Below are positions 29,074 through 62,943 of a stretch of 64,000 nucleotides of DNA, in pieces (within the stretch, counting starts at the first letter, position 1; the number at the start of each line of letters is the position of its first letter). A model generated the notes under the pieces. The model worked only from the letters and a program-made list of their open reading frames with translations, was not told the DNA's origin and ran no database searches. The stretch comes from Macrostomum hystrix (Eukaryota; Animalia; Platyhelminthes). The stretch is taken from NCBI GenBank assembly GCA_950097015.1, contig CATNEN010000002.1, forward strand, positions 1,860,001-1,924,000, given 5' to 3'. Both the position numbers and the translations under genes were made by a program.

Positions 29074-30107
29074 AATCAAAGTTTCAATGCAAATCTAACG
29101 AATCTGAATTTTTTGTTTACTGTTTTAGAATAATAAATTGTGTATTTATCATACCACACTACTTAAAAGTAGCGATGCCTGAAAGTCATCAAGTCAAAGT
29201 CAAAGTTTAATTATTGCTTCTGAGAGAAGAAACAAGTAATGCATTAAACAATATTAAATAAATTAAATAAAAAAACGACCTGACCTAGAACTAGAACAAG
29301 ACTGCCACTTTGCAAAAAATACTCCAATTAGTGAAAACATAGCCAAGAGAACAACAGAACAATAGCCAAAAGAACAATGCGTTTTTTGTTATAAATAAGT
29401 CCAATAGTATTTGTCAATTACTTTTGTATCTATTGGAAACATTGTGAAATTATAATATATAGTTTTGGTATTCTATTTAGTGTCATAAGAATAAGTTAAA
29501 AAAAATCGAATTCGAAAATACTACATTTAAAAAAGATAACCAAGACAATACGCAGGATTAACAGAAAGTATTTTTGATCTCAAATCCCTCTGTAATGATT
29601 TCACAATGTCAGTAGGAAAAAACCCGGCAAAGACAGATTTTGGATTCTAAAAATAGAAAGTTGATTCAATTGAAAAAAGCCATAGACTATAAACTATAAA
29701 ACAGTTTAATTGACTATATAATGTCAGTGAGATCGACTCAAGAATCTTAAATTTGGACGGAGATGGACGGGATGAGATGGAGCGCAGGTTTTTTCAAAAT
29801 ATACCAACTACACATGGCTATATTAACTACTATAATTAGTTTCAAGTAGTTTATTTATCCTGTTTTGCCCCAACAATCATATTCTCTCTATGCCGCGGGT
29901 GGCCCAGATGAAGGAGAAATCCGGGATCTGGATAAAAGATGGACGGGTGTGGGGCTGAGAAGCCGCGGACGAATAGAAATCGGAAGGAAACAGAGACGGC
30001 CGAAGCCAATATATGAGTGGGCAATGCATGCTGCTGTGCGAGCTAGCACCTCCTTTACTAAAAGCAGTAAAAAAAAGCAGCAGAAATTGTCACTGGCCGC
30101 TATAGAA

Positions 30108-31031
30108 ATGAACGATCCGGAATTCACCGAGGCGCTGTGGCATAGCGACCTGACTGCGATTCGCGCATACCTGCAGAATCAACTGCAACAGCTGGCTGAG
30201 CAGTCGGTTGAATTCGGCGAAGGACTTGACGCTGTGCTCGGTCGCGATTCGGACGGCAACTCGGCGTTGCACCTGTGCGTGAGGGCCAATGCTCAGCCTG
30301 AGCTGTTCGGCCTGTTGCTAAGGTCTGGCGGTTGCTGCCCAGCCGCTAGGAACCAGGACGGCCACCTGGCTGAGGATCTGTTTCAGGAATCGAAATTCGG
30401 CCCGCTGTACGCCGAGGAGTTGGACAACTGGATGGCGCAGCTACTGGCCGGCGGCAAGACGGCGGAGCTGGATTCGTGGATCCTGCGTGGATGGACAATT
30501 CCAGATTGGCGCGAGGAGGCCTTCCGCAACCTCGTGACCGAAGGCGTCATCGCTGAAACCGATTTGGCCGCGATGTTCGACCGTCTGGAACATCTGCAGG
30601 ACTCAGTGGACCGGCTGCACGAGTTGCCGTGGTCGGAAGCGGTGGAGCACTTTCGTCAAGAATCGATCCCGGGACTGCTGAGCAGTTTGGACCAATGCGG
30701 CCTGGGCCTGCTGCACAAGGCGGCTCTGGAAGGCGACTCAGCCGCGGCTAGGCGACTCCTGGAGCTCCAGCCGACGCTGGTCGATTCGAAAGATTTTCTA
30801 GACCGCCCAGCCGGCTTCTACTGCGACCCCGGCGACCAGGAGATCGGCGACCTGCTCCTGTTGCCATTGGCAACTGAGCTCAATCCCCTGGGCTGCTCTG
30901 GCGCCACGGCCGATCAGCTGCGGGCTCGATTGGCCGCTGGCTGCGCTCGAAGACAGCGACGACTCACCTCGGCTGACTGCGAAGCTCTGGCAGCGGCGAC
31001 TGCGGCTGCGGCTGCGGCTGCTCGAGATTAG
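30108..31031 (+). CDS. Ankyrin-repeat protein (start uncertain; frame open from 29865)
   Basis: Ankyrin motifs [26 protein letters not shown]...RNQDGHLA and [42 protein letters not shown]; GC-rich coding composition from ~30100. Confidence 0.75.
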
Positions 31032-42835: not shown

Positions 42836-43212
42836 GGCGATGTTTTGCATTCGCATTTTTGCAAAAAAAATGGCGTCTAGAAGAAACTTTTCGGTTTTAT
42901 ATTATCGATCAGAATTTGGGCATAAAATTGTACTTTAATCTTTGTAAGAACAGGAGCAGCTCATTTCCTCTCCTATGTTGAGTACGTACAAAAACGTACA
43001 GCTCAACTCCTTCCCAAAATGTATTGCAGGCGATTTTTATTCCTTTAGTGCGATAAGCTCTTGCAACTATAAGATTTAGCCTCCATGCCATTTTTCTATC
43101 CGTCGGACAGTACAAAAGTCTGACAATACACGGCTAGCCCCTGAACCATTTTACACAGCAATCCGTGACAGTCTTTAAAGCAAAAGAACGGCGACTGATT
43201 CAAACTTCTGTA

Positions 43213-46200
43213 ATGTCGACCTGTAAACTCATCTCAGAAGATTTAAAAAAAGTAGGTGAAATTGCGAAACAGTTTCAACTTTTATGGTCTGACAGGAATT
43301 TTTCTCAAATTGGGATCAAGCCAGATCCAGTTGAAGAGAAACTGAAGTTGATACAAGCTTTCATGAGTTGCTTTGTCAATCAAAATCTGCGAGATTGGTT
43401 CTGCGGGTTGACCGTGATTTTCTTTGCCATAGAAGAAGACGTGGGATCATCTTTAATTTTCTTTGTGTATGCCATCGCTGATTTGCAAGTCCGTGACAGT
43501 TTCTGCGCTCAGGCAGCAGAAGACTCCGCTAGAAAAGGAAAATGGGACGTTGTCTGCTTTCTCACTGACGCAGTTACCGACAGCAGCCTAAGAACCAAAA
43601 TCTGTTTGAAACTAGCCAACTTCCTTTTTTCTGAAGCGGCCACTCAGCCTAATTGGATTGTATTCAAAGATCTGGTGCGTAAAATTTCAGATGAAAGCAT
43701 TAAGGAGCAGTTTTGTTTAACATGCACTGAAATTGCTGCGGGAAATATGGACGCAAAGACGCTTTCAGCCGTCGTCAACTCGACGCAAGCATCACCAGCT
43801 CCGTCAGCTGAGGGCGCAGCAATTCCACCCCGCTGGCTCATCAGGAAGTCCTGCTGTCAGAAACCCCTGCTTGCCCTGCTGTCACATCTCACCGTCTCTG
43901 GCGACAACTCAATCCTGCATTGCACTCTGGCTCAGATGCAGCCAGCTCAGGTCACGGAACTGCTCTGTCTCTTAATCACTCAAGGCCACGTTGCATTGGC
44001 TGCAGCACTGGTTGGTGATGAGAGCTTCAGCAAAGAATATGTCGACCAGCGAGATGACACTGGAGCCACAGCGCTTATGCTGGCGGCTGATGAAGGTCAT
44101 CACGAGCTGATCAAGCAGCTGCTGGATCTCGGAGCATTATCGGATGCTGCAGACAGTCAGGGTCGGACTGCACTGACACGAGCAAACAATGCAGACCAAA
44201 TGAGAGCTGTCAAAGCTCTGGAAGACAGAAGAAAAGATCATCGCGACCACGTTGATGATGAAGTTCGTACTTCGAAGCTGATGAATAAAAATCAACGACA
44301 ACAGCGAAAACTTAAAAAAAATATGGAGTCGAGTAGAAGTTGCAGAAAGAGCAAGTGAGTCTGAACTTTGAATTCTTACAAAGCTATAAAGTGTTATCTG
44401 TCCATCTTCAAATTAGTTTTTAACCTGTTTCTTAAATCAAATCCACGTTTTAGGACGCGAATCCAAGAGGAAAATCAGCTGAGCCTTGACCTCCACAATA
44501 TTCTTTGCCGTGCTGGGTTCACCCAACAAAGAGCACAGTGTCAGCAGGTGCTAGCTGACTCACTGGAAAGTTTCGCGAGTCAACTAATCAGTTTTGAACT
44601 CCGCCGAGAGATGACGGGCAGCTTCTCAGAGGGCTGGGCAAACAGCTTAGTACAAGTGAACGGCAGGACAGGGGCCGACTCTGACATTGACTGGACGATA
44701 TTCCTTGCCAGAGAGATGCTCCATCTTGAGGGCCAATGCAATTGCAGCAATGCGAAACTGCTTAAGGTCAAAGAGGGTCACGCCCTGGTGGATGTTGGAC
44801 AGGGTAAGGAATGTAGGTAACAAACCTTTCATTAAGTTCTACTTAACCAGAGCATGGATGTTATTAAGAACATAATATTCATGTCAAGCACCGGGTTTTG
44901 TCGATACTCCGATTGCCTGAGCTCTGGTCACGATAAGGCTTCTTATTACGAGTAATGCTCTCAGTCCTTAGGGTCGTCTTCCATCATTTAGCGTCGTCCT
45001 CTATCCTTAGCGACGTCTTCCACCTTAGCGACGTCTTCCCCCTTAGCGACATCTTCCACCTTAGCGACATCTTTCATCCTTAGTGATATCTTCCACCTTA
45101 GCGATGTCTTCCACCTTAGTGACGTCTTCCACATTAGCGACGTCTTCCACCTTAGCGACGTATTTCGTCATTAGCGACGTCTTCCACCCTTAGCGACGTC
45201 TTCCATCTAAGTTAGTGACGTTTTCAATTAAGGTTAGTGACGTCTTCTATCTAAGTTAGTGACTTCTTCCACCTTAGCGACGTCTTCCATCCTTTGCGAC
45301 GTCTTCCACCTTAGCGATATCTTTCATCCTTAGTGACGTCTTCCACCTTAGCGAAGTCTTCCACCTTAGCGACATCTTTCATCCTTAGCGACGTCTTCCA
45401 CCTTAGCGAAGTCTTCCATCCTTAGCGACGTCTTTCACCTTAGCGACATCTTTGGTCATTAGTGACATCCTCTATCTTTAGCGACATCTTTCATTCTTTG
45501 CACTGACCTCCATAATAAAAAGAAAAGTTAGTTTTTTGATGTTCTCGATGTGGATAGAAATACATTTTCTGGGGCTGTCAAAAGACAAGGGACAAGGGAT
45601 ATCGGTTTGCATTTTCTGTGCTTAGAAGTTGAGTATGCTACAAGTGACCTTGGCAAATCGGCCATTCACCATTTCAGGCAGCCAGCCGGCAGTAACTGCA
45701 GCCGCATGCGGGGTGCGACCGGCGCAGGACGAGTGCCATGCGATCCAGTGCTGCAGCGGGTTCGGCTCCGATCAGCAAAGGCTCCTGCAGGACAGTTGCC
45801 ACTTTCATGTTCACTTGGTGAAAGCAACCAGACCGAATTCAAAAAACGAACTTAGACTGAGTTTCAGCTTTCAAGAAAAACAAATCATGAGAAATCTGTG
45901 CATTATTCAAGGCCAACTCTTCACAATTATCAAGTTTATCTTTAAGAGGCACCTGCCAATTACCCTAGCAACGCCAGGACTCAAAACCTACCACGCCAAG
46001 ACTCTGCTCTTCCACATGCTTGACAAGCATAGGATGTATAACTTTGCACGCTGGAAACCAGAGAATCTGATCGCCCTGCTGGAGGAGTCTCTCGACATGA
46101 TGCTGGGCTTCATCGACTCCAACGACTCACCCGATGAGTGCATGCCGCATTTCTTCATTCCTAACGCTCGACTCTACTTCAAGAATGCTGGAATTGGAGG

Positions 46201-47068
46201 TGAATTCAAAAACACAAAGCAGAAGGTTCGAGACAGACTAAGAGAAATAAGAGACGATGTGAGAGTAGTGATAGGGCTCTTTAGAAAAGTATTGCGACAG
46301 CTGAGATCAGAAAACTATTACTTCCACCCGTTCACTCTGTTGCCACTGACCGAACCGTCTGTGCTTGTTAGTGAAAGAGACACACTTCATACTTCGTACA
46401 TAAGTGAAGTATACAAAACAGTTTATTTGTGGATGAAGGTGTCAGAGTCGACTTCAAATACTGATGATCTTCTCAACTTTTTATCATCTAAACGGTTCAA
46501 CATAATGATCGAGCTGCCACAGTGCAGGTGTGCAGCGCTGTGCATGGCCGCTGTGATTCACCTTGCACTAAGAGACTTAGAGGCGGCTCAAACGTGCGTG
46601 AGGCAGCTTCTTGGTCATCGAGTTCGATCAGCGTGGAAACCTGAAGAGATTTTGGATGCTTTTCTGGACGATGACTCTGACTGGGCCTGGAGGTTCTGCA
46701 TCCTGTGCGACAAACCGCCCAGCTATCAGTTCCTCCCCGAGTTTACGCGGACTCTGCTCACAGCCAGAATGTCTCAGCCTCGCTCCAACCACCTGTACGT
46801 GAACTTTCGCTGCCTGACCTGGAGTCTCCAAGCTGAGCTGCCTCACACTCGCTCAGCAATCGACTTCGAGGCTTGGCACGCAGAGCTGCAAGAGGACCCG
46901 GACATGGAGGAGCTGTACACTTTGGCTCACTACAGCGACCAACTCGAGCACGTGGATTTCTGCCTGCAGCAGATGGAGGCCATCAGAGATGAGAAACGCG
47001 TCGTTATGGACACGCAGGATGAAGAGAAGATCCGCTACGTCAGTAAAAAACTGGAGAGACTCAGATGA
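43213..47068 (+). CDS. Ankyrin-repeat + Mab-21/cGAS-like nucleotidyltransferase (cGLR-like) fusion, ~960 aa
   Basis: Exons 43213-44354, 44454-44803, 45678-47068; introns 44355-44453 (phase 2) and 44804-45677 (phase 1), GT-AG, in frame (2883 nt). Ankyrin: DQRDDTGATALMLAADEGHHELIKQLLDLGA..DSQGRTAL. NTase: TGSFSEG-x13-DSDID. Mab-21 motifs: HLVK..ELRLSFSFQEK, LKTYHAKTLLF, W.PENLIALL, CMPHFFIPN. A possible acceptor at 43158 means an upstream exon may exist. Confidence 0.85.
44965..45500. repeat. Intronic minisatellite, ~18-19-bp unit (TTAGCGACGTCTTCCACC), same family as 40444-42835
   Basis: Shares TTAGYGACGTCTTCCA core with the upstream array; lies in intron 44804-45677. Confidence 0.9.
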
Positions 47069-47559: not shown

Positions 47560-48880
47560 TGTTCCCGCTGACATTCCCGCTGACATTCCCACTGACATTC
47601 CCGCTGACACTCCTGCTGACATTCCCGCTGACATTCCCGCTGACATTCCCGCTGACACTCCTGCAGACATTCCCGCTGACACTCCTGCAGACATTCCCGC
47701 TGACACTCCTGCTGACATTCCCGCTGACATTCCCGCTGACATTCCCGCTGACACTCCTGCTGACATTCCCGCTGACACTCCTGCTGACATTCCCGCTGAC
47801 ACTCCTGCTGACATTCCCGCTGACACTCCTGCTGACATTCCCGCTGACATTCCCGCTGACATTCCCGCTGACATTCCCGCTGACACTCCTGCTGACATTC
47901 CTGCTGACATTCCCGCTGACATTCCCGCTGACACTCCTGCTGACATTCCCGCTGAAACTCCTGCAGACATTCCCGCTGACATTCCCGCTGACATTCCCGC
48001 TGACACTCCTGCTGACATTCCTGCTGACATTCCCGCTGTCATTCCCGCTGACACTCCTGCTGACATTCCCGCTGACACTCCTGCAGACATTCCCGCTAAC
48101 ATTCCCGCTGACATTCCCGCTGACACTCCTGCTGACATTCCCGCTGACACTCCTGCTGACATTCCCGCTGACATTCCCGCTGACATTCCCGCTGACACTC
48201 CTGCAGACATTCCCGCTGACACTCCTGCAGACATTCCCGCTAACATTCCCGCTGACATTCCCGCTGACACTCCTGCTGACATTCCCGCTGACACTCCTGC
48301 AGACATTCCCGCTAACATTCCCGCTGACATTCCCGCTGACACTCCTGCTGACATTCCCGCTGACACTCCTGCTGACATTCCCGCTGACATTCCCGCTGAC
48401 ATTCCCGCTGACACTCCTGCAGACATTCCCGCTGACACTCCTGCAGACATTCCCGCTGACATTCCCGCTGACATTCCCGCTGACACTCCTGCTGACATTC
48501 CCGCTGACACTCCTGCTGACATTCCCGCTGACACTCCTGCTGACATTCCCGCTGACATTCCCGCTGACATTCCCACTGACACTCCTGCTGACGTTCCCGC
48601 TGACACTCCTGCTGAAATTCCCGCTGACATTCTCGCTGACATTCCCGCTGACGATCCCGCTGACATTCTCGCTGACATTCCCGCTGACAATCCCGCTGAC
48701 ATTCCCGCTGACATTCTCGCTGACATTCTCGCTGGCATACCCGCTGACATTCTCGCTAACACTCCTGCTGACATTCCCGCTGACATTCCCGCTGCCAATC
48801 CCGCTGACATTCCGATTGATATTCCCGCTGACAATCCTCTGAAACTGATGACACTCCTGCTGACATTCCCGCTGACAATC
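47560..48880. repeat. Minisatellite, 12-bp unit (GCTGACATTCCC / GCTGACACTCCT)
   Basis: About 110 tandem units; source of three long artefactual ORFs. Confidence 0.95.
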
Positions 48881-49327
48881 CCACTGACATTTCCGTATTG
48901 AGTAAGAACCTTTACAACACAATTCAGCTCTGAAAGTTTATACACCCTCTAAGCACAATGTGCACTGAGCTAAGATAAGATTTTAGATAAATTTCAGCAC
49001 AGCCAACAACTAGCCTTCTGTGTCGATTTTGACCTTTTTAAGTGGTGGGCAACGCAAACTCTATGACTGCATTGTCTATTACTAAACTAAATAAAGCGAT
49101 GCGCAATTATTCACAGAGATTGCATTTCCGGTGAAAGGAAGACCGCCATTATGAAATGAAATTGCACTCGGCCTATAGCACAACAGCCAAACAGATTAAA
49201 AGCTTTGCACCGCAAACCTATAAATAGCGGGCAGAGTTTGCAGCCATAAAACTTTTACCAATAGCCACAAATCAGAAAGCTAGACCTTTTTATTTTGGAT
49301 TTCTAAAAAACTAAAAAACTAGCAAAA

Positions 49328-50486
49328 ATGCTGCGAACGATGTTAAACAGTTTCTGCTGTACAGGACTATTGCTCACGCTGGTCATTGTAGCATTTCACT
49401 GCCACGCAATGGTGCAAGCAGAAGCCGCAGATAACGACTGCGCCAATGTTGGTGAGTGAAATTATATTTTTATTTATCCTTTTAAATTAGAAAATTAATA
49501 TTGAAATGGCTTTTAACTTACACAGATACGTACTAAATAAAACTAACTTTAATTTTAAAGAGCACCCACCACCCCAATCTTAAAATGGGCAACCATGCAC
49601 CACCCCATTCTTACGAGCGTAGAAGGGCACCCAACACCCCATTCTTAGAAGGGCACCCACCATCCTATTCTTGGAAGAGCACCCACCACCCCATTCTTAG
49701 AAGGGCACCCACCATCCTATTCTTGGAAGAGCACCCACCACCCCATTCTTAGAAGGGCACCCACCACCCCATTCTTAGAAGGGCACCCACCACCCCATTC
49801 TTAGGAGTGCTCCCACCACCCGTTTCTTAGAAGAGCACCCACCACCCCATTCTTAGGAGGGCACCCACCACCCGTTTCTTAGAAGAGCATCCACCACTCC
49901 ATTCTTAGAAGAGCACCCACCACCCCATTCTTAGAAGAGCGACCCAACCCGTTTCTTAGAAGAGCACCCACCACCCCATTCCTAGAAGAGCATTCACAGT
50001 TTTCATATGCCTAAATGCAAATCTTCAGGCACCGACGATGACGATGGTGAGAGTGTCATCTGCGGCCGCGTGGCCTACGTGTCAGACGGCGACACACTCC
50101 GCCTGACTTCGGACGACAACGACGAAAACCGCGAAACTCTGCGCATCCGGCTGGTGCAGATCGACGCGCCGGAGTTGGCGCAGCCGCACGGCGAGGCGGC
50201 GAGAGACGCCCTGCGCCAGATGGCGCCAAACGGTGCTCGAGTTTGCATCCTTGCCGACAGCCGAGACATCTACGGCCGCACTCTGGGTCGGGTCTGCCGC
50301 GGCTCGGACGATTTGAATCGGCGCCTAGTAGCCGAGGGTCACGCCTGGTGTTACAGGGGCCGCTGCCAGCGCGACTACAGGGCGGCTGAGACTCAGGCGC
50401 GCGCGGCAAGGCGCGGACTGTGGGCTGCGCCAGCGATGGCGCCGTGGATCTATCGGCAGCAGCAGCGGCGTCCAAGATCTGCTTGA
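49328..50486 (+). CDS. Secreted single-domain staphylococcal nuclease-like (thermonuclease) protein, 193 aa
   Basis: Exon 1 49328-49451 (MLRTMLNSFCCTGLLLTLVIVAFHCHA, signal-peptide-like) joined by phase-1 GT-AG intron 49452-50028 to exon 2 50029-50486. SNase motifs VSDGDTL, IRLVQIDAPE, DIYGRTLG, LNRRLVAEGHAW, AETQARAARRGLW. Confidence 0.88.
49560..49990. repeat. Intronic minisatellite, 26-bp unit (GAAGGGCACCCACCACCCCATTCTTA)
   Basis: Tandem units in the nuclease gene intron. Confidence 0.9.
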
Positions 50487-51366
50487 CGAGTTGATTCATT
50501 GATTAGTTTTAACGATCTATTTTGCAACGCTTGTCTACTAGAAAATAACTATCTAGCTAATAAACAGTCGCATTTTATACTACTTTTTTGTCACGTGACT
50601 TAGTAGGCTGATGCGAATTTAAATAAAAGGAAACGAAAAAAATTTCAAATGAAAAATTCTTTTGTCAGCGGGAATGCCTGCAAAGTCCGAGGTCCTATAT
50701 ACCAGAGGGGATCAAATAGGCCGATTGTCAGTCGGCGATTTGTCTATGGGCAGTTTATTTACGCTCGTATGGGCAGTTTGTCTATGGGCGAGTTGTCTAT
50801 GGGTAATTTGTCGATGGGCAGTTTGTCTGTGGGCAGTTTGTGATTTTCAACAAAAAAGTTCGTGCACATGGACTCTATAATATAGTTAGTGTTATGCAAA
50901 AATGAAAATACTTTTCATTATAGAGCTAGATAATGCCTACGGAAAGGCATTAGTTAAACTAGTTAGTCACTGTGCAAAATTTGTGGTGGAAAACCGAAAT
51001 TTTCCACTATAACTGTTACACTAAACTGTCTGACCGAATGACCTTCTTGTGAACCCTGAATTATGAGACTGTGTTACAGAGATTGCACGCCTTTGATAAA
51101 CTACTGTATATAAACCAGTTTTGTATCATATTGGATCATAACAGGCTAGCAGCTGTGTGAAATTTAATTGAAGCTTATCTCATAGTTTGCACAGCTTAAA
51201 GCCAGGAGTTCCTGTTACAGCTGGTTCGCGATCCTCTTTAATTCAACGTTAAGATAGAAAGGTTCTGTGCGTTTTTCTAAATCATAGATTTTAGATAGTA
51301 CGTAATTATATTATTAATCTAGTATTTAAAGTGAATTATGAACTGCAATTAAGAAAATTTTTCATT

Positions 51367-51890
51367 TGGAGAGGAGGAGAGGAGGGTAGAAGAGAGGAGA
51401 AGAGAGGAGAGGAGGTAAGAGGAGAGGAGAGGAGAGGAGAGGAGAGGAGAGGAGAGGAGAGGAGAAGAGAGAAGAGGAGAGGAGGGGAGAGGCGAGGAGA
51501 GGAGAGGAGAGGAGAGGAGAGGAGAGGAGAGGCGAGGAGAAGAGAGGAGAGGAGAGGAGAGGAGAGGAGATGAGAGGCGAGGAGAGGAGAGGAGAGGAGA
51601 GGAGAGGAGAGGAGAAGAGAGCAGAGGAGAGGAGGGGAAAGGAGAGGAGAGGAGAGGAGAAGAGAGGAGAAGAGAGCAGAGGAGAGGAGGGGAGAGGCGA
51701 GGAGAGGAGAGGAGTGGAGAGGAGAGGCGAGGAGAAGAGAGGAGAGGAGAGGAGATGAGAGGAGAGGAGAGGAGAGGAGAGGAGAGGAGCGGAGAGGAGA
51801 GGAGAGGAGAGGAGAGGCGAAGAGAGGAGAGGAGAGGAGAGGAGAAGAGAGGAGAGGCGAGGAATGGAATAGGAGGGGAGATGAGAGGAT
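51367..51890. repeat. (GAGAG)n pentanucleotide microsatellite
   Basis: Polypurine run visible directly. Confidence 0.95.
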
Positions 51891-53355: not shown

Positions 53356-56300
53356 TCAGCGAGCAGCATCAGCGTAGTCCTGCAGGTAGGCGTAGGGCGC
53401 GGTCAGGTGGCCCTCCTCGGCGATGGTGGCATCCTGCAGGACTCGACTGCAGCCGCCGGGCGCCACGTGGGGCAGCAGCATCTCGGGCAGCACCCGGCGG
53501 AGGATCAACTCGCCGAAGGTGCTCGACGAATCGCGCGGCAGTTCAATCGGCAGATTGTCCACCGACATGACGTCGACTATCGTCTGGAAGTTGGCATCGT
53601 CAACCGGATGATTGGCTGAATCCAACAGCTCCGAGCCAGTCGCCGGATCGAAGCTGAAGATTGGATCAGCCACGGTGGTGGCACGCAGTGTCGAGGGCAA
53701 CGAGGACACCGGCGCAATGTCGCACGTGACGTCACCGATGAGGCGGACTCCGAAATCGCGACGGCGCATGTCCTCCAGGGTGAGGAGCGGCGCGCAGCGG
53801 TGGTCCCAGAAGATGCCGTTGATGAGGACGTTGCCAGCGGCGGCGAAGGGCCACAGGACGCTGTGGTAGCCGGACGGGTCGACAAAGAAGTCGACACTCC
53901 AGGCCGCGTCCGAGCCCTTGGTATCGATGGCGGGATGGGAGTTCGGGGAAATTTTTGCTGGGTGCTGAAAGTCATCGTTCCGCGTCTCAATATCAGGGAT
54001 TCTGTGGGGTCCGGCTTATATCCTCGTCACGTGACTGGCAGCGTCTAGGGCTTTGGGATAAGGATCATTGAGTCGTTGGGAAATGGGGATCTCAAAGTCA
54101 ATGGGAATGGGAATTTCAGAGTCATTAGGAATGGGGATCTTTGAGTCGTTGAGAATGGGATCTTCAAGTCATTTGGAATGGGGATCCTTGGGTATGCTGC
54201 TACGCTTCCAATCTCTACCTTTCGAAACAGCCAATCAGCGGGCAGCTGGGTGTACGCCCCTGCGTGACCGGGCAGCCAATTACGAGCGAGAAAATCCGGC
54301 GGCGCCAATCGCTCCAGACCCAGCAGGTCTAGCAGCTCGCAGGCGCCGTTGCCAACGCGACCGTCGCCAGTGACAACTATGCGCAGGTCTGGGATTGAAA
54401 AGGACATAAAAGGGGAGCGAATGGGGGATTAGGAGTGACGGAATCCTAAAATTAGGAGTGACAGATCATGTGATTAGGAGTGACGGAATCCAGAGTTTAG
54501 GAGTGACGGAATCCAGAGTTTAGGAGTGACGGAATCCAGAGTTTAGGAGTGACGGAATCCAGAGTTTAGGAGTGACGGAATCCAGAGATTAGGAGTGACG
54601 GAATCCAGAGTTTAGGAGTGACGGAATCCAGAGTTTAGGAGTGACGGAATCCAGAGTTTAGGAGTGACGGAATCCAGAGATTAGGAGTGACGGAATCCAG
54701 AGTTTAGGAGTGACGGAATCCAGAGTTTAGGAGTGACGGAATCCAGAATTTAGGAGTGACGGAATCCAGAGTTTAGGAGTGACGGAATCCAGAGTTTAGG
54801 AGTGACGGAATCCAGAGTTTAGGAGTGACGGAATCCAGAGTTTAGGAGTGACGGAATCCAGAATTTAGGAGTGACGGAATCCAGAGTTTAGGAGTGACGG
54901 AATCCAGAGTTTAGGAGTGACGGAATCCAGAGTTTAGGAGTGACGGAATCCAGAGTTTAGGAGTGACGGAATCCAGAGTTTAGGAGTGACGGAATCCAGA
55001 GATTAGGAGTGACGGAATCCAGAATTTAGGAGTGACGGAATCCAGAGTTTAGGAGTGACGGAATCCAGAGTTTAGGAGTGACGGAATCCAGAGTTTAGGA
55101 GTGACGGAATCCAGAGTTTAGGAGTGACGGAATCCAGAGTTTAGGAGTGACGGAATCCAGAGTTTAGGAGTGACGGAATTTAGAGTTTAGGAGTGACGGA
55201 ATCCAGAGTTTAGGAGTGACGGAATCCAGAGATTAGGAGTGACGGAATCCAGAATTTAGGAGTGACGGAATCCAGAGTTTAGGAGTGACGGAATCCAGAG
55301 TTTAGGAGTGACGGAATCCAGAGTTTAGGAGTGACGGAATCCAGAATTTAGGAGTGACGGAATCCAGAGTTTAGGAGTGACGGAATCCAGAGTTTAGGAG
55401 TGACGGAATCCAGAGTTTAGGAGTGACGGAATCCAGAGTTTAGGAGTGACGGAATCCAGAGTTTAGGAGTGACGGAATCCAGAGTTTAGGAGTGACGGAA
55501 TCCAGAGATTAGGAGTGACGGAATCCAGAATTTAGGAGTGACGGAATCCAGAGTTTAGGAGTGACGGAATCCAGAGTTTAGGAGTGACGGAATCCAGAGT
55601 TTAGGAGTGACGGAATCCAGAATTTAGGAGTGACGGAATCCAGAGTTTAGGAGTGACGGAATCCAGAGTTTAGGAGTGACGGAATCCAGAGTTTAGGAGT
55701 GACGGAATCCAGAGTTTAGGAGTGACGGAATCCAGAGTTTAGGAGTGACGGAATCCAGAGATTAGGAGTGACGGAATCCAGAATTTAGGAGTGACGGAAT
55801 CCAGAGTTTAGGAGTGACGGAATCCAGAGTTTAGGAGTGACGGAATCCAGAGTTTAGGAGTGACGGAATCCAGAATTTAGGAGTGACGGAATCCAGAGTT
55901 TAGGAGTGACGGAATCCAGAGTTTAGGAGTGACGGAATCCAGAGTTTAGGAGTGACGGAATCCAGAGTTTAGGAGTGACGGAATCCAGAATTTAGGAGTG
56001 ACGGAATCCAGAGTTTAGGAGTGACGGAATCCAGAGTTTAGGAGTGACGGAATCCAGAGTTTAGGAGTGACGGAATCCAGAGTTTAGGAGTGACGGAATC
56101 CAGAGTTTAGGAGTGACGGAATCCAGAGTTTAGGAGTGACGGAATCCAGAATTTAGGAGTGACGGAATCCAGAGTTTAGGAGTGACGGAATCCAGAGTTT
56201 AGGAGTGACGGAATCCAGAGTTTAGGAGTGACGGAATCCAGAGTTTAGGAGTGACGGAATCCAGAGATTAGGAGTGACGGAATCCAGAATTTAGGAGTGA

Positions 56301-57620
56301 CGGAATCCAGAGTTTAGGAGTGACGGAATCCAGAGTTTAGGAGTGACGGAATCCAGAGTTTAGGAGTGACGGAATCCAGAATTTAGGAGTGACGGAATCC
56401 AGAGTTTAGGAGTGACGGAATCCAGAGTTTAGGAGTGACGGAATCCAGAGTTTAGGAGTGACGGAATCCAGAGTTTAGGAGTGACGGAATCCAGAGTTTA
56501 GGAGTGACGGAATCCAGAGATTAGGAGTGACGGAATCCAGAATTTAGGAGTGACGGAATCCAGAGTTTAGGAGTGACGGAATCCAGAGTTTAGGAGTGAC
56601 GGAATCCAGAGTTTAGGAGTGACGGAATCCAGAATTTAGGAGTGACGGAATCCAGAGTTTAGGAGTGACGGAATCCAGAGTTTAGGAGTGACGGAATCCA
56701 GAGTTTAGGAGTGACGGAATCCAGAGTTTAGGAGTGACGGAATCCAGAATTTAGGAGTGACGGAATCCAGAGTTTAGGAGTGACGGAATCCAGAGTTTAG
56801 GAGTGACGGAATCCAGAGTTTAGGAGTGACGGAATCCAGAGTTTAGGAGTGACGGAATCCAGAGTTTAGGAGTGACGGAATCCAGAGTTTAGGAGTGACG
56901 GAATCCAGAATTTAGGAGTGACGGAATCCAGAGTTTAGGAGTGACGGAATCCAGAGTTTAGGAGTGACGGAATCCAGAGTTTAGGAGTGACAGATCCTAA
57001 GATTAGGAGAGCCGGGTGAAGAGAAGATTGTCCTCACCCCGCAGCATCTCAGGCTTGATTTCATTGGCGTAGCGCTGTTTCGCGGCCTCCCAATCCTGGG
57101 CCTCGTTTAGGCGGAACAGGCGGCAAGTGCCGGTGCGGCGGCCCCAGGCCATGACGGTGTTGTGGGCGCCAACAATGCCAGCCCAGCGGCCGAAGCCAAT
57201 CAATCGAATGCCCTGAGCGTCGCGCATGCACTCCCAGTCCATTAGGCGGATGCGTTTTTCTAGAACGGCGCACAGCAGGTCGCGATTGTGCGGCTGCTTC
57301 TTGATGGTGTGAGAGAACAGAGCGTAGGTAGCCCCCGGCTGCAGAGTTTCGATAGCTGGCGGCTTCACGCCCAGCAGAAAGTTGGCTCCCGTGGCCTTGT
57401 CCACAATGCTGGCTCCGGCAGCTGCGTACTCAGCGTCACTATAGCAACGAAACGGGCAGCTCTCAACTTGGATGGTGACGCGAGAGCCATACTGGGAGAG
57501 AATCTCGGCACAATGGGCTGGAGTCAGTGGCGTCCTAGTCTCGTGTGGGACCAGAGTTTCCCGAACAATGCCAATGGTGATTGGCTCTTGGTCTGATTGT
57601 GCTTCAGTTGTGGCAGACAT
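53356..57620 (-). CDS. Stand-alone lysine-ketoglutarate reductase / saccharopine dehydrogenase-like protein (AlaDh/PNT fold), copy A, 437 aa
   Basis: Exons (minus) 57620-57038, 54388-54219, 53916-53356 (phases 1, 0; 1314 nt; the AAG acceptor at 53917 restores gap-free alignment with copy B). Motifs GIVRE...ETRTPLTP, LGVK, FSHTIKKQPHN, RLIGFGRWAGIVGAHN, VTGDGRVGNG (Rossmann), GDVTCD, MSVDNLPIELPRD. Confidence 0.9.
54425..57010. repeat. Intronic minisatellite, 23-bp unit (GGAGTGACGGAATCCAGAGTTTA), ~110 units with higher-order structure
   Basis: Fills intron 54389-57037 of copy A; GATTA and ATTTA variants recur periodically. Confidence 0.97.
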
Positions 57621-60312
57621 GGCTTGCTCGGCTTAAAATTTTTTTGCACTTGCTTTCTGCAATTTTGTTATTTTCATTGTGATGGAATTGTCAACACAAT
57701 ATAAAGATTGCAAAAAAGAATTAACTAGCATTCATCATTTTATGAGCAAAAAAATCATAAAATCAAAAAAAGTTAAAAAATTCACCTGTCAACAGTATCA
57801 AGGTAAGAAAACATACTCAGATGAAGGTATCCTGAATATTAAATAAACTTTACAGGACTGCAAAAAAAGTTAGTTAGACCTCTGGATATATATCTAGTAA
57901 TATGTATCATTTTGTGCATTTGAGAAATAATATTTTTCACTTTTTTTGCTCTAAATGTGTAAATTGAGGTGATAGAAAGTGATGATTATTTATAGGGTAG
58001 TTGTTTTGCTGAAAAAAACTTTTATTAAGCTTTGAATGCCTCATTAGATAAATAAGTTTTTACACATAAATACAGTAACCCTAAGCAACATTCCAAGTAC
58101 TAAAAAACAACAGAAAAGTTAAACTTAGTGTAAAATAGTGTAAGTTTTGTATATCACAAATAAATATTAAAACAAACAGCTAATACAGTACCTTAATGAC
58201 TCCAATGGTTTCAATTACAGATAAGCTTTAGATATATATTTTTCAAGTTTACATTTTAGATACGATATTGGAAAAATGACTTTAAAATGTTTTAAAGTTT
58301 ATAATTGCCAATACTGTAATTTTCTTTCTAGCACAACATTTCTTCAAATTTCTGAATTGATATCTTGCTACAACAAAAAATATTCACATCACATTGCACA
58401 CAAAGAGTAAAACTAAAATAACTAAAGACAATAAGATTATATACATATTCTTCCTAATAATATACTTGCAATATACTAGCAAAATAAACTTGGCATATTG
58501 AGAAATACATAAGTGCATAGTATATTTACAGATACAATTTCTTTCAGTTAAAACAAAATGGTGACAGTGACGGAATACAGAAAACAATAGCAAAATGCAA
58601 GACATACGAGTAAGACATCTTTTAATTCCAAAAAGCGTTAGAATTACATAATCGATAATATGCAAATATAAATAAGCTAATTGTAATTTTAAGAGCACAA
58701 AAAATATTAAACTACAAGTTTCCGTATTTTATGTTATTCAATGCTGCCTTCCTTAGCGTTGACAATAAACGGTGATAGCAAATATAAATAAATATATTTT
58801 GGTGTTGTTTCGCAGAATAGGATAATCCAAAGCCATGCCAAAAGCAACAGAACATTTTAAGTAAAACTAATGTTTCAATATATATTTTACACGTAAAGTT
58901 GCTTGTCTAAATGAGTTAAAAAATGTATAAATAAAAAATGAGAAACAATAAAATTTATTAAATTAAAGTTTTCAGTCTGTTCAAAAACATCGAAGTTCAA
59001 ACGAGCGGCATCGTTATATTCCTTACAAGTGTACTTGTAAGGAATTTTAAATTTATTAATTAAAATATTGTATTTTTAATAGTTTTTGCTAAGTTGCTTT
59101 TGCAATTATCTAAAGGCTAAAATAAGCAGCTTTTAAGAGTTAGCGAAGAGCTAGCAATTCACTTAGAGCTTATGCGCCTAAAGTCTTAATCTTGTGTTAT
59201 TTCATTTTATCATTGAAGAATTGTATAGTATAATTATAAATGTGAAAGAAACATTTTAATTCTTTGTTACGCATGCTTTAAATCTGTTAATTTTAGTGCT
59301 GTTTCAAGCGGTCTTTTTAATAATTTTTAATAACATTTCAATAAAGTTCTTTCACCCAGAATTCTGAGCATCTAAAACAAATACTTTCAAGTAAAAACAA
59401 TATTTCGTCCCTGTAGGAAATTATACAAAAACTTATATGTGTGAAGCTCTTTCAATCTTCATTCGCAACTAGCTATTGGATTAAACTTTGATTAAAGACG
59501 TTTGCTGCACTTTACGGCTACTATAAGTAATGTATGTGGACTCATAGAGACACGTACTATTATTTTTCTTAGCTATATCTTCACGGTCTCAACCCATTTC
59601 AAGTCAGATAATAATGCTTTAGAAACACGATAAAAAGTGGATATTCTTGCAAGAGTACCTTACGTGCATGCGACCTTGACCTAGAAACTAAGTCAGAAAA
59701 GCTTCTATCTGTCAAAAGTTCAAACCTAAAGGTCCAAAAGTCGAGGACCTCAAAGTAAAGAATATAGTTCATTTTCTTAGCACAAAGCTGATATAATATA
59801 TTATATGCTGATTGGCCATGCAAAGCCTGTAATGCAAACTAACAAACTAGCTTTGATCGACTTTGCTCAAAAGAGCGCAAAAATAGCTATTGCAATATCT
59901 CGATAAGCGACTTATCAAACAGATGGTAAGAGATCTTGCAGAATAAAATTGTTCCACGGACCGGAGGCGGGCTGCAAAAAAGCCGTGAAGGTGCGAGACA
60001 AAAAAGAGGTGCGAAAAATACTGGGATTTCATAAATTTTCACATGACTTTGACGATAAATATTCGATTAAAAAACGAAACCTTAGAATATAGAAATCGGA
60101 AAGTTAATCATGGAGAAAAGAACACGACAATACTCACTCAGGCCCACGGGAGGCAAGATTTGATCTGCGTGTTTTGGAAACAAAAAAGTCGGAAAAAACA
60201 ACCCATCACCAAAAACTAAGGGAAGCGGATGAATTTTTAATGCTACAATATCAAGTGTTAAGTGAATAGTAGATAAATAAAACTGTTTAATCCGTTAATT
60301 CGCTGGCTGCAA

Positions 60313-62943
60313 TCATTCGTCTCCGTTAACAAAGTCGTTCAAATAGGCGAACACGTTCGTCAGTGAGCCGGCCTGAGTGATGGTGGCATTTTCTAGCACT
60401 CGACTAGCCCGGTGGCAGCCGTCCGCAGCGGCAACTTCAAGGAATTCCGGCAGCACTCGATTAAGAATCATGTCGCCAAAGTCGTAGGACGCGTCCCTGG
60501 GCAATTCGCTTGGCAGATTATCTACCGCCATCACGTCGATGGCCAGTGAAGAGCGAGCCTCGTCTGGCCGCAATTCGCGAGCCACAACTGGGTCGAATGT
60601 AAAAACCTGAATAAAAAAACCAGAGGACTTTTAGACCAATGTGTTTTATGGCTTCGCTTAAGGCAATATTTGAAAATAACAATTGTTTGCTTTTTCACTA
60701 AAACGGCCCTTTTATGGGCTACCAATAGCACGACACAACATAAAAATTCTGGTTAATGACCGATAGGTCGTGAGTTCGAATCTCAGCCTAAGGGGAAAAC
60801 GTGTCCTGAAAACACTCGTTTATCTTACTGGATCTTTTACAACGGTTGGCCGCACGGTGCAAGGCAGCGAAGCCACAGGAGCAATATCGCAGGTGATGTC
60901 ACCGATGAGGCGAACTCCCAATTCTGGCTTGAGCAAATCTTCGATGGTTAGCAGCGGGCCGCAGCGGTTATCCCAGTACATGCCGTTGATGAGTATGTTA
61001 GCCTTGGCCAGGTAGGGCCAGGCTACGCTGTGATAACCCGTGGGATTCGAATAATAGTCGGGACTCCAGCTGTTGTCCGGTCCGATCGCGAACAGGTGAT
61101 CGGCCGGCAGCTGGGTGTACACAGGCGGATGCTCGCCTGACCAATCGTGTTCCAGGAACTGCTTGGGTGGGATTTTTTCATAGCCGAGCAGATCGAGAAT
61201 CTCGCAGCAGCCCGTGCCGACACGACCGCTGCCTGTCAGTGCGATGCGCATTCCTGCAATGGGAGATATTGCGAGTTTTAGATCAACTGAAAATGAGAGT
61301 TTTAGAAACCTGCACTTTAAACTCATTTAGGGACTCATGAGGATTCTGATGATATTTAAGGATTATAGGGGATACTTAAGGACTCTAGGGATATTCAAGG
61401 AATCTAGGGGATACATGAGGACTCTAGGGATATTTAAGGACTCTAGGGGATACTTGAGGATTCTAGGGATATTTAAGGACTACTTGAGGATTCTAGCTAG
61501 GGGATATTCGAGGATTGATTGGTATATTTCAGAATTTTAGGGAATGTTTAGGTTTTTGGATATTTAATGACTCGATTAAATACAAAAAAACAAAAAATAT
61601 TTCTAGAACCGAGCTCAACACATAGCAGCAAAAATCCCAACTCACCCTTGAGCAGATCCACAGGCAGTTCTTTAATATACTTCTGTTTAGCAGCCTCCCA
61701 GTCTGCAATCTCGCACTGTCGAAACAGATCGAAGCGGCCAGTTCGCTGGCCCCAGGCGGCGATGGTGTTGTGAGCGCCAACAATGCCCGCCCAGCGACCG
61801 AAACCCAGCAGGCGAGCCTTGTTCTCGTCTCGCATAAACTCCCAGTCCATTAGGCGAATGCCCTTCTCTAGGATGGCACGCAGCAGAACACGATTGTGCG
61901 GCTGGCGTTTGGCAGTATGCGAGAACATCACGTAGGTTGCACCCGCCTGCAGCGACTCCAGCGATGCCGCCTTCACGCCTAGCAGCAGATCGGCCTGCTC
62001 TGCCTGCGAACGGCGTCAAGGAAGATAACATAAATTATAGTGTCAAAATCATATACTGACTACTCAAAGTAGGCACCTTTCAACATTTTCGCTTCCTTAT
62101 AGACTTCTAACCCCTCGATTGTTTATTGTTTCTCTCTTGTTCTCACCCTCGCTTCTCTATCTTGTTCTCACCCTCGCCTCTCTCTTGTTCTCACCCTCGC
62201 CTCTCTCTTGTTCTCACCCTCGCTTCTATCTCTTGTTCTCACCCTCGCTTCTCTCTCTTGTTCTCACCCTCGCTTCTCTATCTTGTTCTCACCCTCGCCT
62301 CTCTCTTGTTCTCACCCTCGCCTCTCTCTTGTTCTCACCCTCGCTTCTATCTCTTGTTCTCACCCTCGCTTCTCTCTCTTGTTCTCACCCTCGCTTCTCT
62401 ATCTTGTTCTCACCCTCGCCTCTCTCTTGTTCTCACCCTCGCTTCTCTCTCTTGTTCTCACCCTCGCTTCTATCTCTTGTTCTCACCCTCGCCTCTCTCT
62501 TGTTCTCACCCTCGCTTCTCTATCTTGTTCTCACCCTCGCCTCTCTCTTGTTCTCACCCTCGCTTCTATCTCTTGTTCTCACCCTCGCTTCTCTCTCTTG
62601 TTCTCACCCTCGCTTCTCTCTCTTGTTCTCACCCTCGCTTCTCTCTCTTGTTCTCACCCTCGCTTCTCTCTTGTTCTCGACCTCACTTCTTGCATTAATA
62701 AAAACAATTTGATAGTTAAAGCCACAAACGAACCTTCTCCACCAGTTTAATACCATGATCTTCGTACTCCTTGTCACTATAGCAACGAAATGAGCACTTC
62801 TCAACTACAATAGATACTTTGTCACCATAGTGAGCTATAATTTTGGCACACTGGCTAGGCGTCAGAGGTGTTCGTGTCTCATTTGGCACCATTGTTTCGC
62901 ACAGAACACCAATAGTGAATGTCTTTGATGTGTCACCATTCAT
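60313..62943 (-). CDS. Stand-alone lysine-ketoglutarate reductase / saccharopine dehydrogenase-like protein, copy B, 428 aa
   Basis: Exons (minus) 62943-62734, 62003-61646, 61253-60829, 60606-60313 (phases 0, 1, 0; 1287 nt). Motifs ETRTPLTP, LGVK, FSHTAKRQPHN, RLLGFGRWAGIVGAHN, LTGSGRVGTG, GDITCD, MAVDNLPSELPRDAS. Confidence 0.9.
61330..61520. repeat. Short degenerate intronic tandem repeat (GAGGACTCTAGGGATATTTAAGGAATCTAGGGGATACTT-like)
   Basis: Imperfect tandem units in intron 61254-61645. Confidence 0.75.
62130..62680. repeat. Intronic minisatellite, ~24-27-bp unit (TCTTGTTCTCACCCTCGCTTCTC)
   Basis: Tandem units in intron 62004-62733 of copy B. Confidence 0.95.

What the first reader, a model, noticed from the sequence alone, without database searches (positions are those of the whole stretch)
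49328..50486. Intron-containing, signal-peptide-bearing bacterial-style thermonuclease in an animal genome
Animals typically carry the SN fold in multi-domain Tudor-SN. This is one domain with the S. aureus nuclease catalytic set apparently intact (D21 in DGDT, R35, D40 and E43 in IRLVQIDAPE, R87 in YGR). The whole catalytic domain is in one GC-rich exon and the signal peptide is on a separate AT-richer exon, as expected if a horizontally acquired gene recruited a host leader exon (inference). Host-type splice sites and an intronic minisatellite argue against contamination. Possible roles: digestion, mucus or biofilm DNA breakdown, defence.
Basis: partly seen in the sequence, partly recalled or inferred. 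Interest (0 to 1): 0.72.

Follow-up and report, generated by a model that had tools for sequence, protein, structure and literature searches.

The report
Bacterial-type secreted nuclease gene in flatworm
A free-living flatworm related to Macrostomum lignano carries, splices and conserves a small gene for a secreted DNA/RNA-cutting enzyme whose only close relatives outside this worm group are bacterial, so it was most probably captured from bacteria long ago and then multiplied into a small gene family.

Summary
Exon 1 (49328-49451) encodes a signal-peptide-like leader. A 577-nt GT..AG intron carries a 26-bp minisatellite. Exon 2 (50029-50486) encodes one complete staphylococcal-nuclease (SNase) domain (Pfam E 7.8e-18) with every catalytic and Ca2+-binding residue intact. 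A public run holds a contig joined precisely at the predicted splice sites.

The gene lies in a eukaryotic chromosome stretch beside clathrin heavy chain. Macrostomum lignano has a 67%-identical counterpart and two further paralogue subfamilies. All share the same phase-1 intron four residues after the first cysteine.

An exhaustive search of 1.84 billion representative proteins found no eukaryote other than Macrostomum among the hits I could identify. The next relatives are bacterial chromosomal and plasmid thermonucleases (45-52% identity). Animal Tudor-SN domains are only 18-21% identical.

The worm genes form one clade (100/98 support), and dN/dS is 0.23. An old bacterium-to-flatworm transfer followed by duplication is the best reading.

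Three points are not shown: the donor, formal nesting inside bacteria (no eukaryotic SNase outgroup was available), and whether exon 1 was recruited. The GC contrast is not evidence of transfer, because GC3 is within the host range.

The scan had already noted a paralogue on another piece of this genome (s1-300448).

The parts
49222..49327 (+). 5' untranslated part seen in the spliced contig, with no upstream ATG. ATG 49328 is the first AUG, in the context caaaaATGc.
   Evidence: Contig of run X2 starts at 49222; sequence read. The true transcript start is not determined, because contigs cannot show ends.
49328..49451 (+). Exon 1 coding part (41 codons + 1 base, phase 1). It encodes the leader and the first conserved cysteine (C38).
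   Evidence: The splice donor was confirmed by the joined contig.
49328..49420 (+). Predicted signal peptide, residues 1-31. The n-region has R3, the hydrophobic core is FCCTGLLLTLVIVAF, and the likely cleavage is after VQA.
   Evidence: Hydropathy scan peaks at 2.9 at residues 13-23. All M. lignano paralogues have an equivalent hydrophobic N-terminus. SignalP was not available, so the cleavage site is inferred.
49452..50028 (+). Spliceosomal intron, 577 nt, GT..AG, phase 1.
   Evidence: Joint 'skips 577, GT..AG' in run X2, absent from DNA run X6. The three M. lignano subfamilies have a homologous phase-1 intron.
49620..49992 (+). Intronic minisatellite, 26-bp unit, about 14 copies.
   Evidence: Tandem Repeats Finder. 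There are 14 matches to the unit, all inside the intron, with 0 expected by chance.
50029..50486 (+). Exon 2 coding part including the stop codon. It holds the whole SNase domain with catalytic D21/R40/D45/E48/R83 (exon-2 numbering) and five conserved cysteines.
   Evidence: Pfam; PDB sequence match; AlphaFold pLDDT 93; Foldseek and VIA matches to staphylococcal nuclease; residue conservation.
50487..50712 (+). 3' untranslated part seen in contigs. AATAAA motifs lie at 50559-50564 and 50622-50627.
   Evidence: Contigs of X1, X10 and X2 end at 50627, 50629 and 50712; sequence read. The poly(A) site is not determined.

Best explanation
This is a real, expressed, two-exon gene of a flatworm related to Macrostomum lignano. 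It encodes a 193-aa precursor made of an N-terminal signal peptide, a short acidic linker and one staphylococcal-nuclease (thermonuclease) domain. After co-translational entry into the ER and leader cleavage (inferred), the roughly 160-aa mature protein is secreted. There it should act as a Ca2+-dependent, sequence-non-specific nuclease on DNA and RNA, using the SNase mechanism. In that mechanism D21 and D40 hold Ca2+, E43 activates water, and R35 and R87 bind the phosphate. Function is inferred from intact residues and fold and has not been assayed. Six cysteines are conserved in the worm family and almost absent from bacterial relatives, which suggests three disulfides added for extracellular stability (inferred). 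The gene descends from a bacterial thermonuclease of the widespread 'IDAPE..Q' subfamily, found on chromosomes and on thousands of conjugative plasmids. It was acquired once by an ancestor of the sampled Macrostomum species and fitted with a phase-1 intron between the leader and the domain. It then duplicated into at least three subfamilies and has been kept under purifying selection. The most likely role is extracellular breakdown of nucleic acids, either in the gut lumen (feeding on microbes and diatoms) or in mucus (eDNA and biofilm). The tissue is unknown.
For: Gene model and splicing: and the joined contig. SNase identity: Pfam E 7.8e-18; PDB thermonuclease E 9e-7; AlphaFold pLDDT 93, pTM 0.87; Foldseek TM 0.8 to staphylococcal nuclease; VIA Z 16.8, rmsd 2.1. 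Catalytic set invariant. Host integration: clathrin heavy-chain exons, Mab-21, ankyrin and cNMP-binding genes lie in the same window, and DNA contigs run from the flanks into the exons. Family in M. lignano: P0001 at 67% identity, and P0121/P0122/P0123/P0197/P0268/P0273. Same phase-1 intron, C-x4-|, in all four genes. Distribution: of 19149 hits in 1.84 billion representatives, the only single-domain proteins above about 105 bits are Macrostomum. The next hits have bacterial or plasmid contexts or bacterial names. At least 5000 plasmid records carry relatives, the best at 44.7% identity. Tree: Macrostomum clade 100/98, window + P0001 99/84. The quick tree of 208 rows gives the same clade at 99. 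Purifying selection: dN/dS 0.23 over 145 codons. Worm-specific cysteines. Tudor-SN SN domains are only 18-21% identical.
Against: The tree contains no eukaryotic SNase (fungal LCL3, plant CAN, Tudor-SN) and no outgroup. The worm clade arises from an unresolved polytomy (support 0-79 at the nodes around it). Nesting inside bacteria and the donor lineage are therefore not demonstrated. Most of the top 150 representatives are unnamed metagenomic proteins whose bacterial origin I checked only for a sample. Run X2 is not labelled as RNA, and its RNA nature is inferred from the intron-less contig and zero depth over the intron and flanks. Secretion, Ca2+ dependence, substrate and tissue are all untested. 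The species of the window is coded in the run table, and the one host-gene search gave no hit, so 'Macrostomum relative' rests on the nuclease gene itself and on an earlier scan note.
Confidence: 0.78

Rival explanations
1. Vertical descent: an ancient eukaryotic single-domain SNase gene was retained in Macrostomum and lost, or not yet sampled, in other animals. Its similarity to bacterial enzymes would reflect slow evolution of the fold.
For: The tree does not resolve a bacterial sister group and has no outgroup. The gene is old in the lineage: paralogues are only about 50% identical and share an intron. Single-domain SNases exist in plants (PMC3505149) and, from general knowledge, in fungi (LCL3).
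Against: No eukaryote other than Macrostomum appeared among identified hits in three searches. Bacterial relatives reach 45-52% identity, while animal SN domains reach 18-21%. Vertical descent would need losses in essentially all other sampled animals. The nearest clusters by features and by shape are 80-100% bacterial.
Confidence: 0.12
2. The gene is bacterial in origin and transcribed, but it is no longer a working secreted nuclease. It could be a decaying relic or a nucleic-acid-binding protein without catalysis.
For: No activity data exist. One M. lignano copy (P0197) is frameshifted after the domain's first 88 residues, so copies do decay.
Against: The reading frame is intact and all catalytic and Ca2+-binding residues are kept. 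dN/dS is 0.23 against the M. lignano counterpart. The structure prediction is confident, a spliced transcript exists, and the cysteine set is conserved across paralogues.
Confidence: 0.07
3. Contamination or mis-assembly: a bacterial gene was wrongly joined to worm DNA.
For: The domain exon has the highest GC of any coding block in the window (0.67), and its best non-worm hits are bacterial.
Against: The GT..AG intron is removed in a transcript contig. The leader sits on a separate exon. DNA contigs from another run bridge the flanks and the exon. The M. lignano assembly has counterparts with the identical intron position and phase on contigs of 65-608 kb. Identity to any bacterium is at most 52%. 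GC3 is within the host range.
Confidence: 0.01

Closest known systems
Bacterial thermonuclease family proteins (YncB / micrococcal-nuclease type, PF00565) of Pseudomonadota, PVC bacteria, Planctomycetota and Cyanobacteria/Melainabacteria, and their plasmid-borne copies
   Same: Single SNase domain of about 135 residues behind an N-terminal export signal. It shares the motifs V.DGDT, R..IDAPE..Q, D.YGR and ARRGLW. Identity is 45-52% and E-values go down to 1e-24.
   Different: The worm gene has a spliceosomal phase-1 intron, a eukaryote-type leader on its own exon, six conserved cysteines that bacteria lack, and host-like GC3. It lacks the Excalibur or ArfC-like tails seen in many bacterial relatives.
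Staphylococcus aureus nuclease A (micrococcal nuclease, EC 3.1.31.1)
   Same: Same fold (Z 16.8, rmsd 2.1 over 121 residues; TM 0.8) and the same catalytic and Ca2+ residues D21, R35, D40, E43 and R87. Both are secreted.
   Different: Only about 25% identity. S. aureus nuclease has no disulfides (general knowledge), whereas the worm protein has six conserved Cys.
Animal Tudor-SN (SND1/p100)
   Same: SN domains share the fold (Z 14.6-16.9).
   Different: Tudor-SN is a roughly 900-aa intracellular protein with four SN domains plus a Tudor-SN5 module. Identity is 18-21%. The worm protein has one domain, is 193 aa and carries a leader.
Plant CAN1/CAN2 staphylococcal-like nucleases and fungal LCL3
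   Same: Eukaryotic proteins with a single SNase domain and Ca2+-dependent activity (PMC3505149; LCL3 from general knowledge).
   Different: CAN proteins are anchored to the plasma membrane by N-myristoylation and palmitoylation (PMC3505149). The worm protein starts MLRT and has a cleavable-looking leader instead. The sequence relationship was not tested here because no sequences were available to the tools.
Macrostomum lignano 'TNase-like domain-containing proteins' (BOX15_Mlig018861g1, Mlig022653g1-4, Mlig008456g1, Mlig013652g1/g3)
   Same: Same family, same two-exon build, same cysteines. Identity is 67% (Mlig018861) or about 51% (the others).
   Different: These database entries are automatic annotations only. 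I found no paper that discusses them. The window's copy comes from a different genome or locus: there is no flank similarity, and dS is about 1.1.

Membership tests
SNase / thermonuclease family (Pfam PF00565) | Sequence match to the family profile above the curated threshold | tested here: met
   65.3 bits against a cut-off of 21, E 7.8e-18, profile positions 1-106 of 107.
SNase / thermonuclease family (Pfam PF00565) | OB-fold barrel plus three helices of staphylococcal nuclease | tested here: met
   AlphaFold model with pLDDT 93. Foldseek E 1.7e-10 and TM 0.80 to 4kta. VIA Z 16.8 to 1sta. This rests on a predicted structure, not a solved one.
SNase / thermonuclease family (Pfam PF00565) | Ca2+ ligands D21 and D40 and catalytic R35, E43, R87 (S. 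aureus numbering) | tested here: met
   All are present in the pairwise alignment. They are invariant in 6 of 6 worm rows and in at least 198 of 201 bacterial rows.
SNase / thermonuclease family (Pfam PF00565) | Ca2+-dependent hydrolysis of DNA and RNA to 3'-phosphates | not testable with these tools
   Needs an enzyme assay.
Secreted protein with a cleavable signal peptide | N-terminal n-, h- and c-regions with small residues at -3 and -1 | tested here: inconclusive
   Hydropathy and inspection show R3, a 15-residue hydrophobic core and VQA|E. The paralogues share the same build. No signal-peptide predictor and no experiment were available.
Horizontally acquired, domesticated bacterial gene in an animal | Physically part of the host chromosome and processed like a host gene | tested here: met
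   The gene sits beside intron-bearing clathrin and other eukaryotic genes. The GT..AG intron is spliced out in a transcript contig, and the M. lignano counterparts have the same intron.
Horizontally acquired, domesticated bacterial gene in an animal | Closest relatives outside the recipient lineage are bacterial, and the gene is absent from other animals | tested here: met
   Searches show only Macrostomum among identified eukaryotes, and bacterial hits at 45-52% identity. The limit is that many top hits are unnamed metagenomic proteins.
Horizontally acquired, domesticated bacterial gene in an animal | Supported nesting of the recipient clade within donor diversity on a rooted tree | tested here: inconclusive
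   The worm clade is monophyletic (100/98) but sits in an unresolved polytomy, and no eukaryotic or distant outgroup was available.
Tudor-SN (SND1) | Four tandem SN domains followed by a Tudor domain inserted in a fifth SN domain | tested here: not met
   One SNase stretch only in a 193-aa product. Identity to Tudor-SN SN domains is 18-21%.
Plant CAN-type membrane-bound SNase | N-terminal myristoylation/palmitoylation motif (MG...C) anchoring the protein to the plasma membrane (PMC3505149) | tested here: not met
   The N-terminus is MLRTMLNS with no Gly2. The sequence relationship to CAN was not tested.

The most novel reading that the evidence does not exclude
A nuclease gene of a kind that travels on bacterial conjugative plasmids was captured once by an ancestor of Macrostomum. 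It was rebuilt for eukaryotic secretion with its own leader exon, a phase-1 intron and three new disulfides, and it expanded into a multigene family. That family gives these microbe- and diatom-eating worms an extracellular DNase/RNase that other animals lack, for feeding, for clearing eDNA biofilm or for defence. This would be a clear case of a functional bacterium-to-flatworm transfer creating a lineage-specific secreted enzyme family.
Probability: 0.5. Interest if true: 0.62.

Novelty: new member of a known kind. Interest (0 to 1): 0.5.

Why it matters
Well-documented, expressed bacterium-to-animal gene transfers are still few outside rotifers, nematodes and arthropods, and I found none described for flatworms of this group. 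This case is unusually clean. The enzyme's mechanism is textbook, every catalytic residue is intact, and the gene has gained an intron, a leader and a set of cysteines. It has also duplicated into subfamilies that can be dated on the Macrostomum species tree. M. lignano is a transgenic and RNAi-tractable model, so function (gut digestion, mucus or biofilm clearing, or reproduction) is directly testable. Other candidate transfers noted in the same genome suggest the lineage may be a useful system for studying how foreign genes are domesticated. The kind of event is known, however, and the protein family is ordinary.

Tried and rejected
1. The search for related loci in genome contigs with the single protein found no relative. 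The 18-row alignment was too diverse to give a search pattern. A 6-row alignment worked.
2. The host-identity check with the single-exon ankyrin ORF 29865-31028 gave no hit at E <= 1e-5. The host is therefore called a Macrostomum relative only from the nuclease counterpart and the earlier scan note. Clathrin pieces could not be used because of the length filter.
3. An exact look-up of the 159-aa ORF 50007-50483 found nothing on record.
4. Synteny: no window ORF from 36-64 kb other than the nuclease exon matches the M. lignano loci L001, L087, L088, L090 or L092. Orthology with P0001 therefore rests on the tree only.
5. P0270 and P0271, listed in the cluster of P0123, are not nucleases. They appear to be a clustering artefact through a 1918-aa fusion model, and I dropped them.
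6. GC content as a sign of foreign origin was rejected. The GC3 of exon 2 (0.74) is inside the host range of 0.45-0.81. All worm copies show the same exon 1 / exon 2 contrast despite dS of about 1.1.
7. A phage vector has little support: only 4 phage records match, against at least 5000 plasmid records. Neither identifies a donor.
8. Six literature searches found no paper on these genes.
9. Eukaryotic SNase sequences (LCL3, CAN, Tudor-SN) could not be fetched with the tools. I did not type them from memory, so they are missing from the tree.
10. Multi-domain hits P0124-P0136 and others, proteins over 280 aa, and loci L021 and L081 (stop codon in the match) were left out of the trees.

Full report
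**1. What is in the sequence**

The coordinates given are exactly the coding span of a two-exon gene on the + strand.
- Exon 1 runs from the ATG at 49328 to 49451 and ends in phase 1 at a consensus donor (TTG|GTGAGT).
- The intron is 49452-50028 (577 nt, GT..AG).
- Exon 2 runs from 50029 to the TGA at 50484-50486.

The joined frame gives 193 residues. The intron holds a 26-bp minisatellite of about 14 copies at 49620-49992. Its unit occurs nowhere else in the window.

**2. The domain**

The exon-2 translation matches Pfam SNase (PF00565) at E 7.8e-18. The score is 65.3 bits against a gathering score of 21, and the match covers the whole profile. It also matches S. aureus thermonuclease chains in the PDB (best E 9e-7). 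In that alignment DGDT, R-x4-DAPE and YGR fall on D21, R35, D40, E43 and R87 of the staphylococcal enzyme.

In an alignment with 201 bacterial relatives and the M. lignano copies, these positions are invariant or nearly so. An AlphaFold model built on 18 sequences has mean pLDDT 93 and pTM 0.87.
- Foldseek puts staphylococcal nuclease variants first (E about 1e-10, TM by target 0.8).
- VIA-align gives Z 16.8, rmsd 2.1 Å over 121 residues and 25% identity to 1sta.

**3. It is a host gene and it is spliced**

The same 64-kb window carries intron-split clathrin heavy-chain exons (3.7-15.5 kb) and ankyrin, cNMP-binding, Mab-21-like and AlaDh/saccharopine-dehydrogenase-like genes. It also holds many minisatellites.

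Thirteen public runs from six studies hold the exon-2 stretch or part of it. Laying four of them on 49100-50750 gave these results:
- Run X2 has a 914-nt contig that joins 49222-49450 directly to 50028-50712. This is reported as 'skips 577, GT..AG (cut +1)', which is exactly the predicted junction.
- Runs X1 and X2 have no depth over the intron or the flanks.
- DNA run X6 covers the intron and both flanks.

X1 and X2 are not labelled as RNA. Their behaviour is that of transcriptome runs, and I treat the joined contig as a spliced transcript (inference). There is no ATG between 49222 and 49328.

**4. The leader**

Residues 1-31 have a basic n-region (R3), a 15-residue hydrophobic core (peak Kyte-Doolittle mean 2.9) and a VQA|E site. 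No predictor was available, so cleavage and secretion are inferred. All M. lignano relatives have an equivalent N-terminus.

**5. Relatives**

A word-index search of 5.8 billion proteins gave one close hit. This is M. lignano BOX15_Mlig018861g1 (P0001), at 67% identity over 95% of the query. After it come bacterial or metagenomic thermonucleases at 38-50% identity.

The exhaustive HMMER search of 1.84 billion representatives found 19149 hits at E <= 1e-3 but only six at E <= 1e-30.
- Four of the six are M. lignano proteins (P0001, P0121, P0122, P0123).
- The other two are multi-domain proteins whose scores are sums over repeats. The one I looked up (P0125) lies in a bacterial gene neighbourhood.

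P0197, which grouped with the worm proteins in the first tree, is also M. lignano and is a frameshifted copy. Contexts of the next single-domain hits are bacterial or plasmid-like:
- P0004 lies beside TonB-receptor, TetR and DinB genes.
- P0002 lies beside ArdA and KlcB genes.

Of the species-representative bacterial and archaeal genomes scanned, 504 stretches encode a relative. The best 80 come from Pseudomonadota, Verrucomicrobiota/Lentisphaerota, Planctomycetota, Cyanobacteriota/Melainabacteria and others, at 32-46% identity. At least 5000 plasmid records carry a relative, 3671 of them conjugative plasmids, with the best at 44.7% identity. Only four phage records do.

A second word search with the paralogue P0121 again returned only M. 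lignano among eukaryotes. The nearest ESM-Atlas clusters by features and by shape are 80-100% bacterial. Animal Tudor-SN SN domains share the fold (Z 14.6-16.9) but only 18-21% identity.

**6. Gene structure across the family**

I mapped the M. lignano genes on their contigs. The junctions are:

| Gene | Junction | Intron length |
|---|---|---|
| Mlig018861 (L001) | NCDNI\|R\|ADDENG | about 3.5 kb |
| Mlig022653 (L087/L088) | NCTTD\|P\|KYLCGRV | about 0.7 kb |
| Mlig013652 (L090) | DCATA\|E\|KYLCGSV | about 2.2 kb |
| Window gene | DCANV\|G\|TDDDDGES | 577 nt |

In all four the intron is phase 1 and lies exactly four residues after the first cysteine. The exon 1 / exon 2 build therefore predates the split of the three subfamilies.

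**7. Tree**

- A 208-row quick tree gave a clade of the six worm rows plus P0197 at SH-aLRT 99.
- An 85-row careful tree (LG+C20+F+G4, 138 columns) gave the seven Macrostomum rows as one clade at 100/98.
- In the careful tree the window gene pairs with P0001 (99/84), and the other two subfamilies are sisters (99/93).

The clade arises from a polytomy of bacterial lineages, and the nodes around it have support 0-79. One origin for the worm family is well supported. The donor is unresolved. Because no eukaryotic SNase or distant outgroup could be included, nesting inside bacteria is not formally shown.

**8. Selection and adaptation**

Against the M. lignano counterpart, over 145 codons, dN is 0.26, dS is 1.14 and dN/dS is 0.23. 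This indicates purifying selection.

Five cysteines in exon 2 and one in exon 1 are conserved in the worm proteins. They occur in at most 6% of bacterial rows at the same columns. From their positions I infer three disulfides:
- an N-terminal pair;
- a pair on neighbouring strands (residues 70-78 and 84-90 of the model);
- a CxxxxC loop.

**9. The GC argument**

Exon 2 has GC 0.67 and GC3 0.74, and exon 1 has GC 0.49 and GC3 0.54. Host exons in the same window have GC3 0.45-0.81. All M. lignano copies show the same exon contrast. With dS near saturation, the GC3 is maintained by the host and is not a bacterial relic. The high GC at codon positions 1 and 2 reflects an Ala/Arg/Gly/Asp-rich protein.

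The contrast therefore says nothing about whether exon 1 was recruited from host DNA. The alternative is that an intron entered an inherited leader. Similarity to bacterial proteins begins about 6-13 residues into exon 2, which fits either route.

**10. Mechanism (committed reading)**

The protein is a secreted, disulfide-stabilised, Ca2+-dependent non-specific nuclease acting outside cells.
- Shown: the gene, the splice, the fold prediction, the residue set, conservation, family expansion and bacterial affinity.
- Inferred: secretion, activity, disulfides, role and a single ancient transfer.

The most likely role is digestion of microbial or diatom nucleic acids in the gut, or degradation of eDNA in mucus.

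**11. Comparison with what is known, and novelty**

The protein is a member of the SNase family. It is not Tudor-SN and not a CAN-type membrane nuclease. The M. lignano relatives exist in databases only as automatic 'TNase-like domain-containing' or hypothetical proteins. Six full-text searches found no paper on them.

I rate it a new member of a known kind (a domesticated bacterium-to-animal transfer), of moderate interest.

**12. Limits**

- The species names of the runs are coded.
- The one host-gene search gave no hit.
- The 159-aa ORF is not on record.
- No synteny with the M. lignano loci was detected.

Noticed in passing
window 53356-62943 (- strand): There are two tandem AlaDh/saccharopine-dehydrogenase-like genes 3-12 kb downstream of the nuclease gene. 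AlaDh_PNT_N matches at E 4e-21 on 57003-57617. Other first-stage notes (s1-388046, s1-384993) flag them as Bacteroidetes-like transfer candidates. Two candidate foreign genes so close together may be worth a joint look.
   Followed up: partly
window 43165-47068 (+): Ankyrin-repeat ORFs are followed by a Mab-21_C-like ORF (E 8e-6), just upstream of the nuclease gene. Another first-stage note (s1-388044) reads this as an ankyrin-Mab-21 (cGAS-like) fusion.
   Followed up: partly
window 47562-48895, 51374-51889 and many other places: The window is unusually dense in long minisatellites. Examples are a 24-bp unit with 56 copies directly upstream of the nuclease gene and GAGGA with 103 copies downstream. 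Many others create long spurious ORFs in all frames.
   Followed up: partly
L092:1797-2297 (M. lignano NIVC01001516.1): P0197 is a copy of the Mlig022653 nuclease. Its frame departs from the family after residue 88, and an unrelated tail follows. It is either a decaying paralogue or an assembly error.
   Followed up: partly
window 29865-31031 (+): This is a 388-aa GC-rich single ORF with one ankyrin repeat. It has no relative at E <= 1e-5 among the 8000 best word-sharing candidates, so it is apparently a lineage-restricted gene.
   Followed up: partly
cluster of P0123: The 90% cluster of the nuclease P0123 also lists P0270 and P0271, which are unrelated proteins. They seem to be linked through a 1918-aa fused gene model (P0274). 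This is a database clustering artefact to keep in mind.
   Followed up: yes
run X9: A run labelled 'marine metagenome' holds 22% of the sampled words of the exon 2 / 3'UTR stretch. This suggests DNA of this worm or a close relative in an environmental sample.
   Followed up: no
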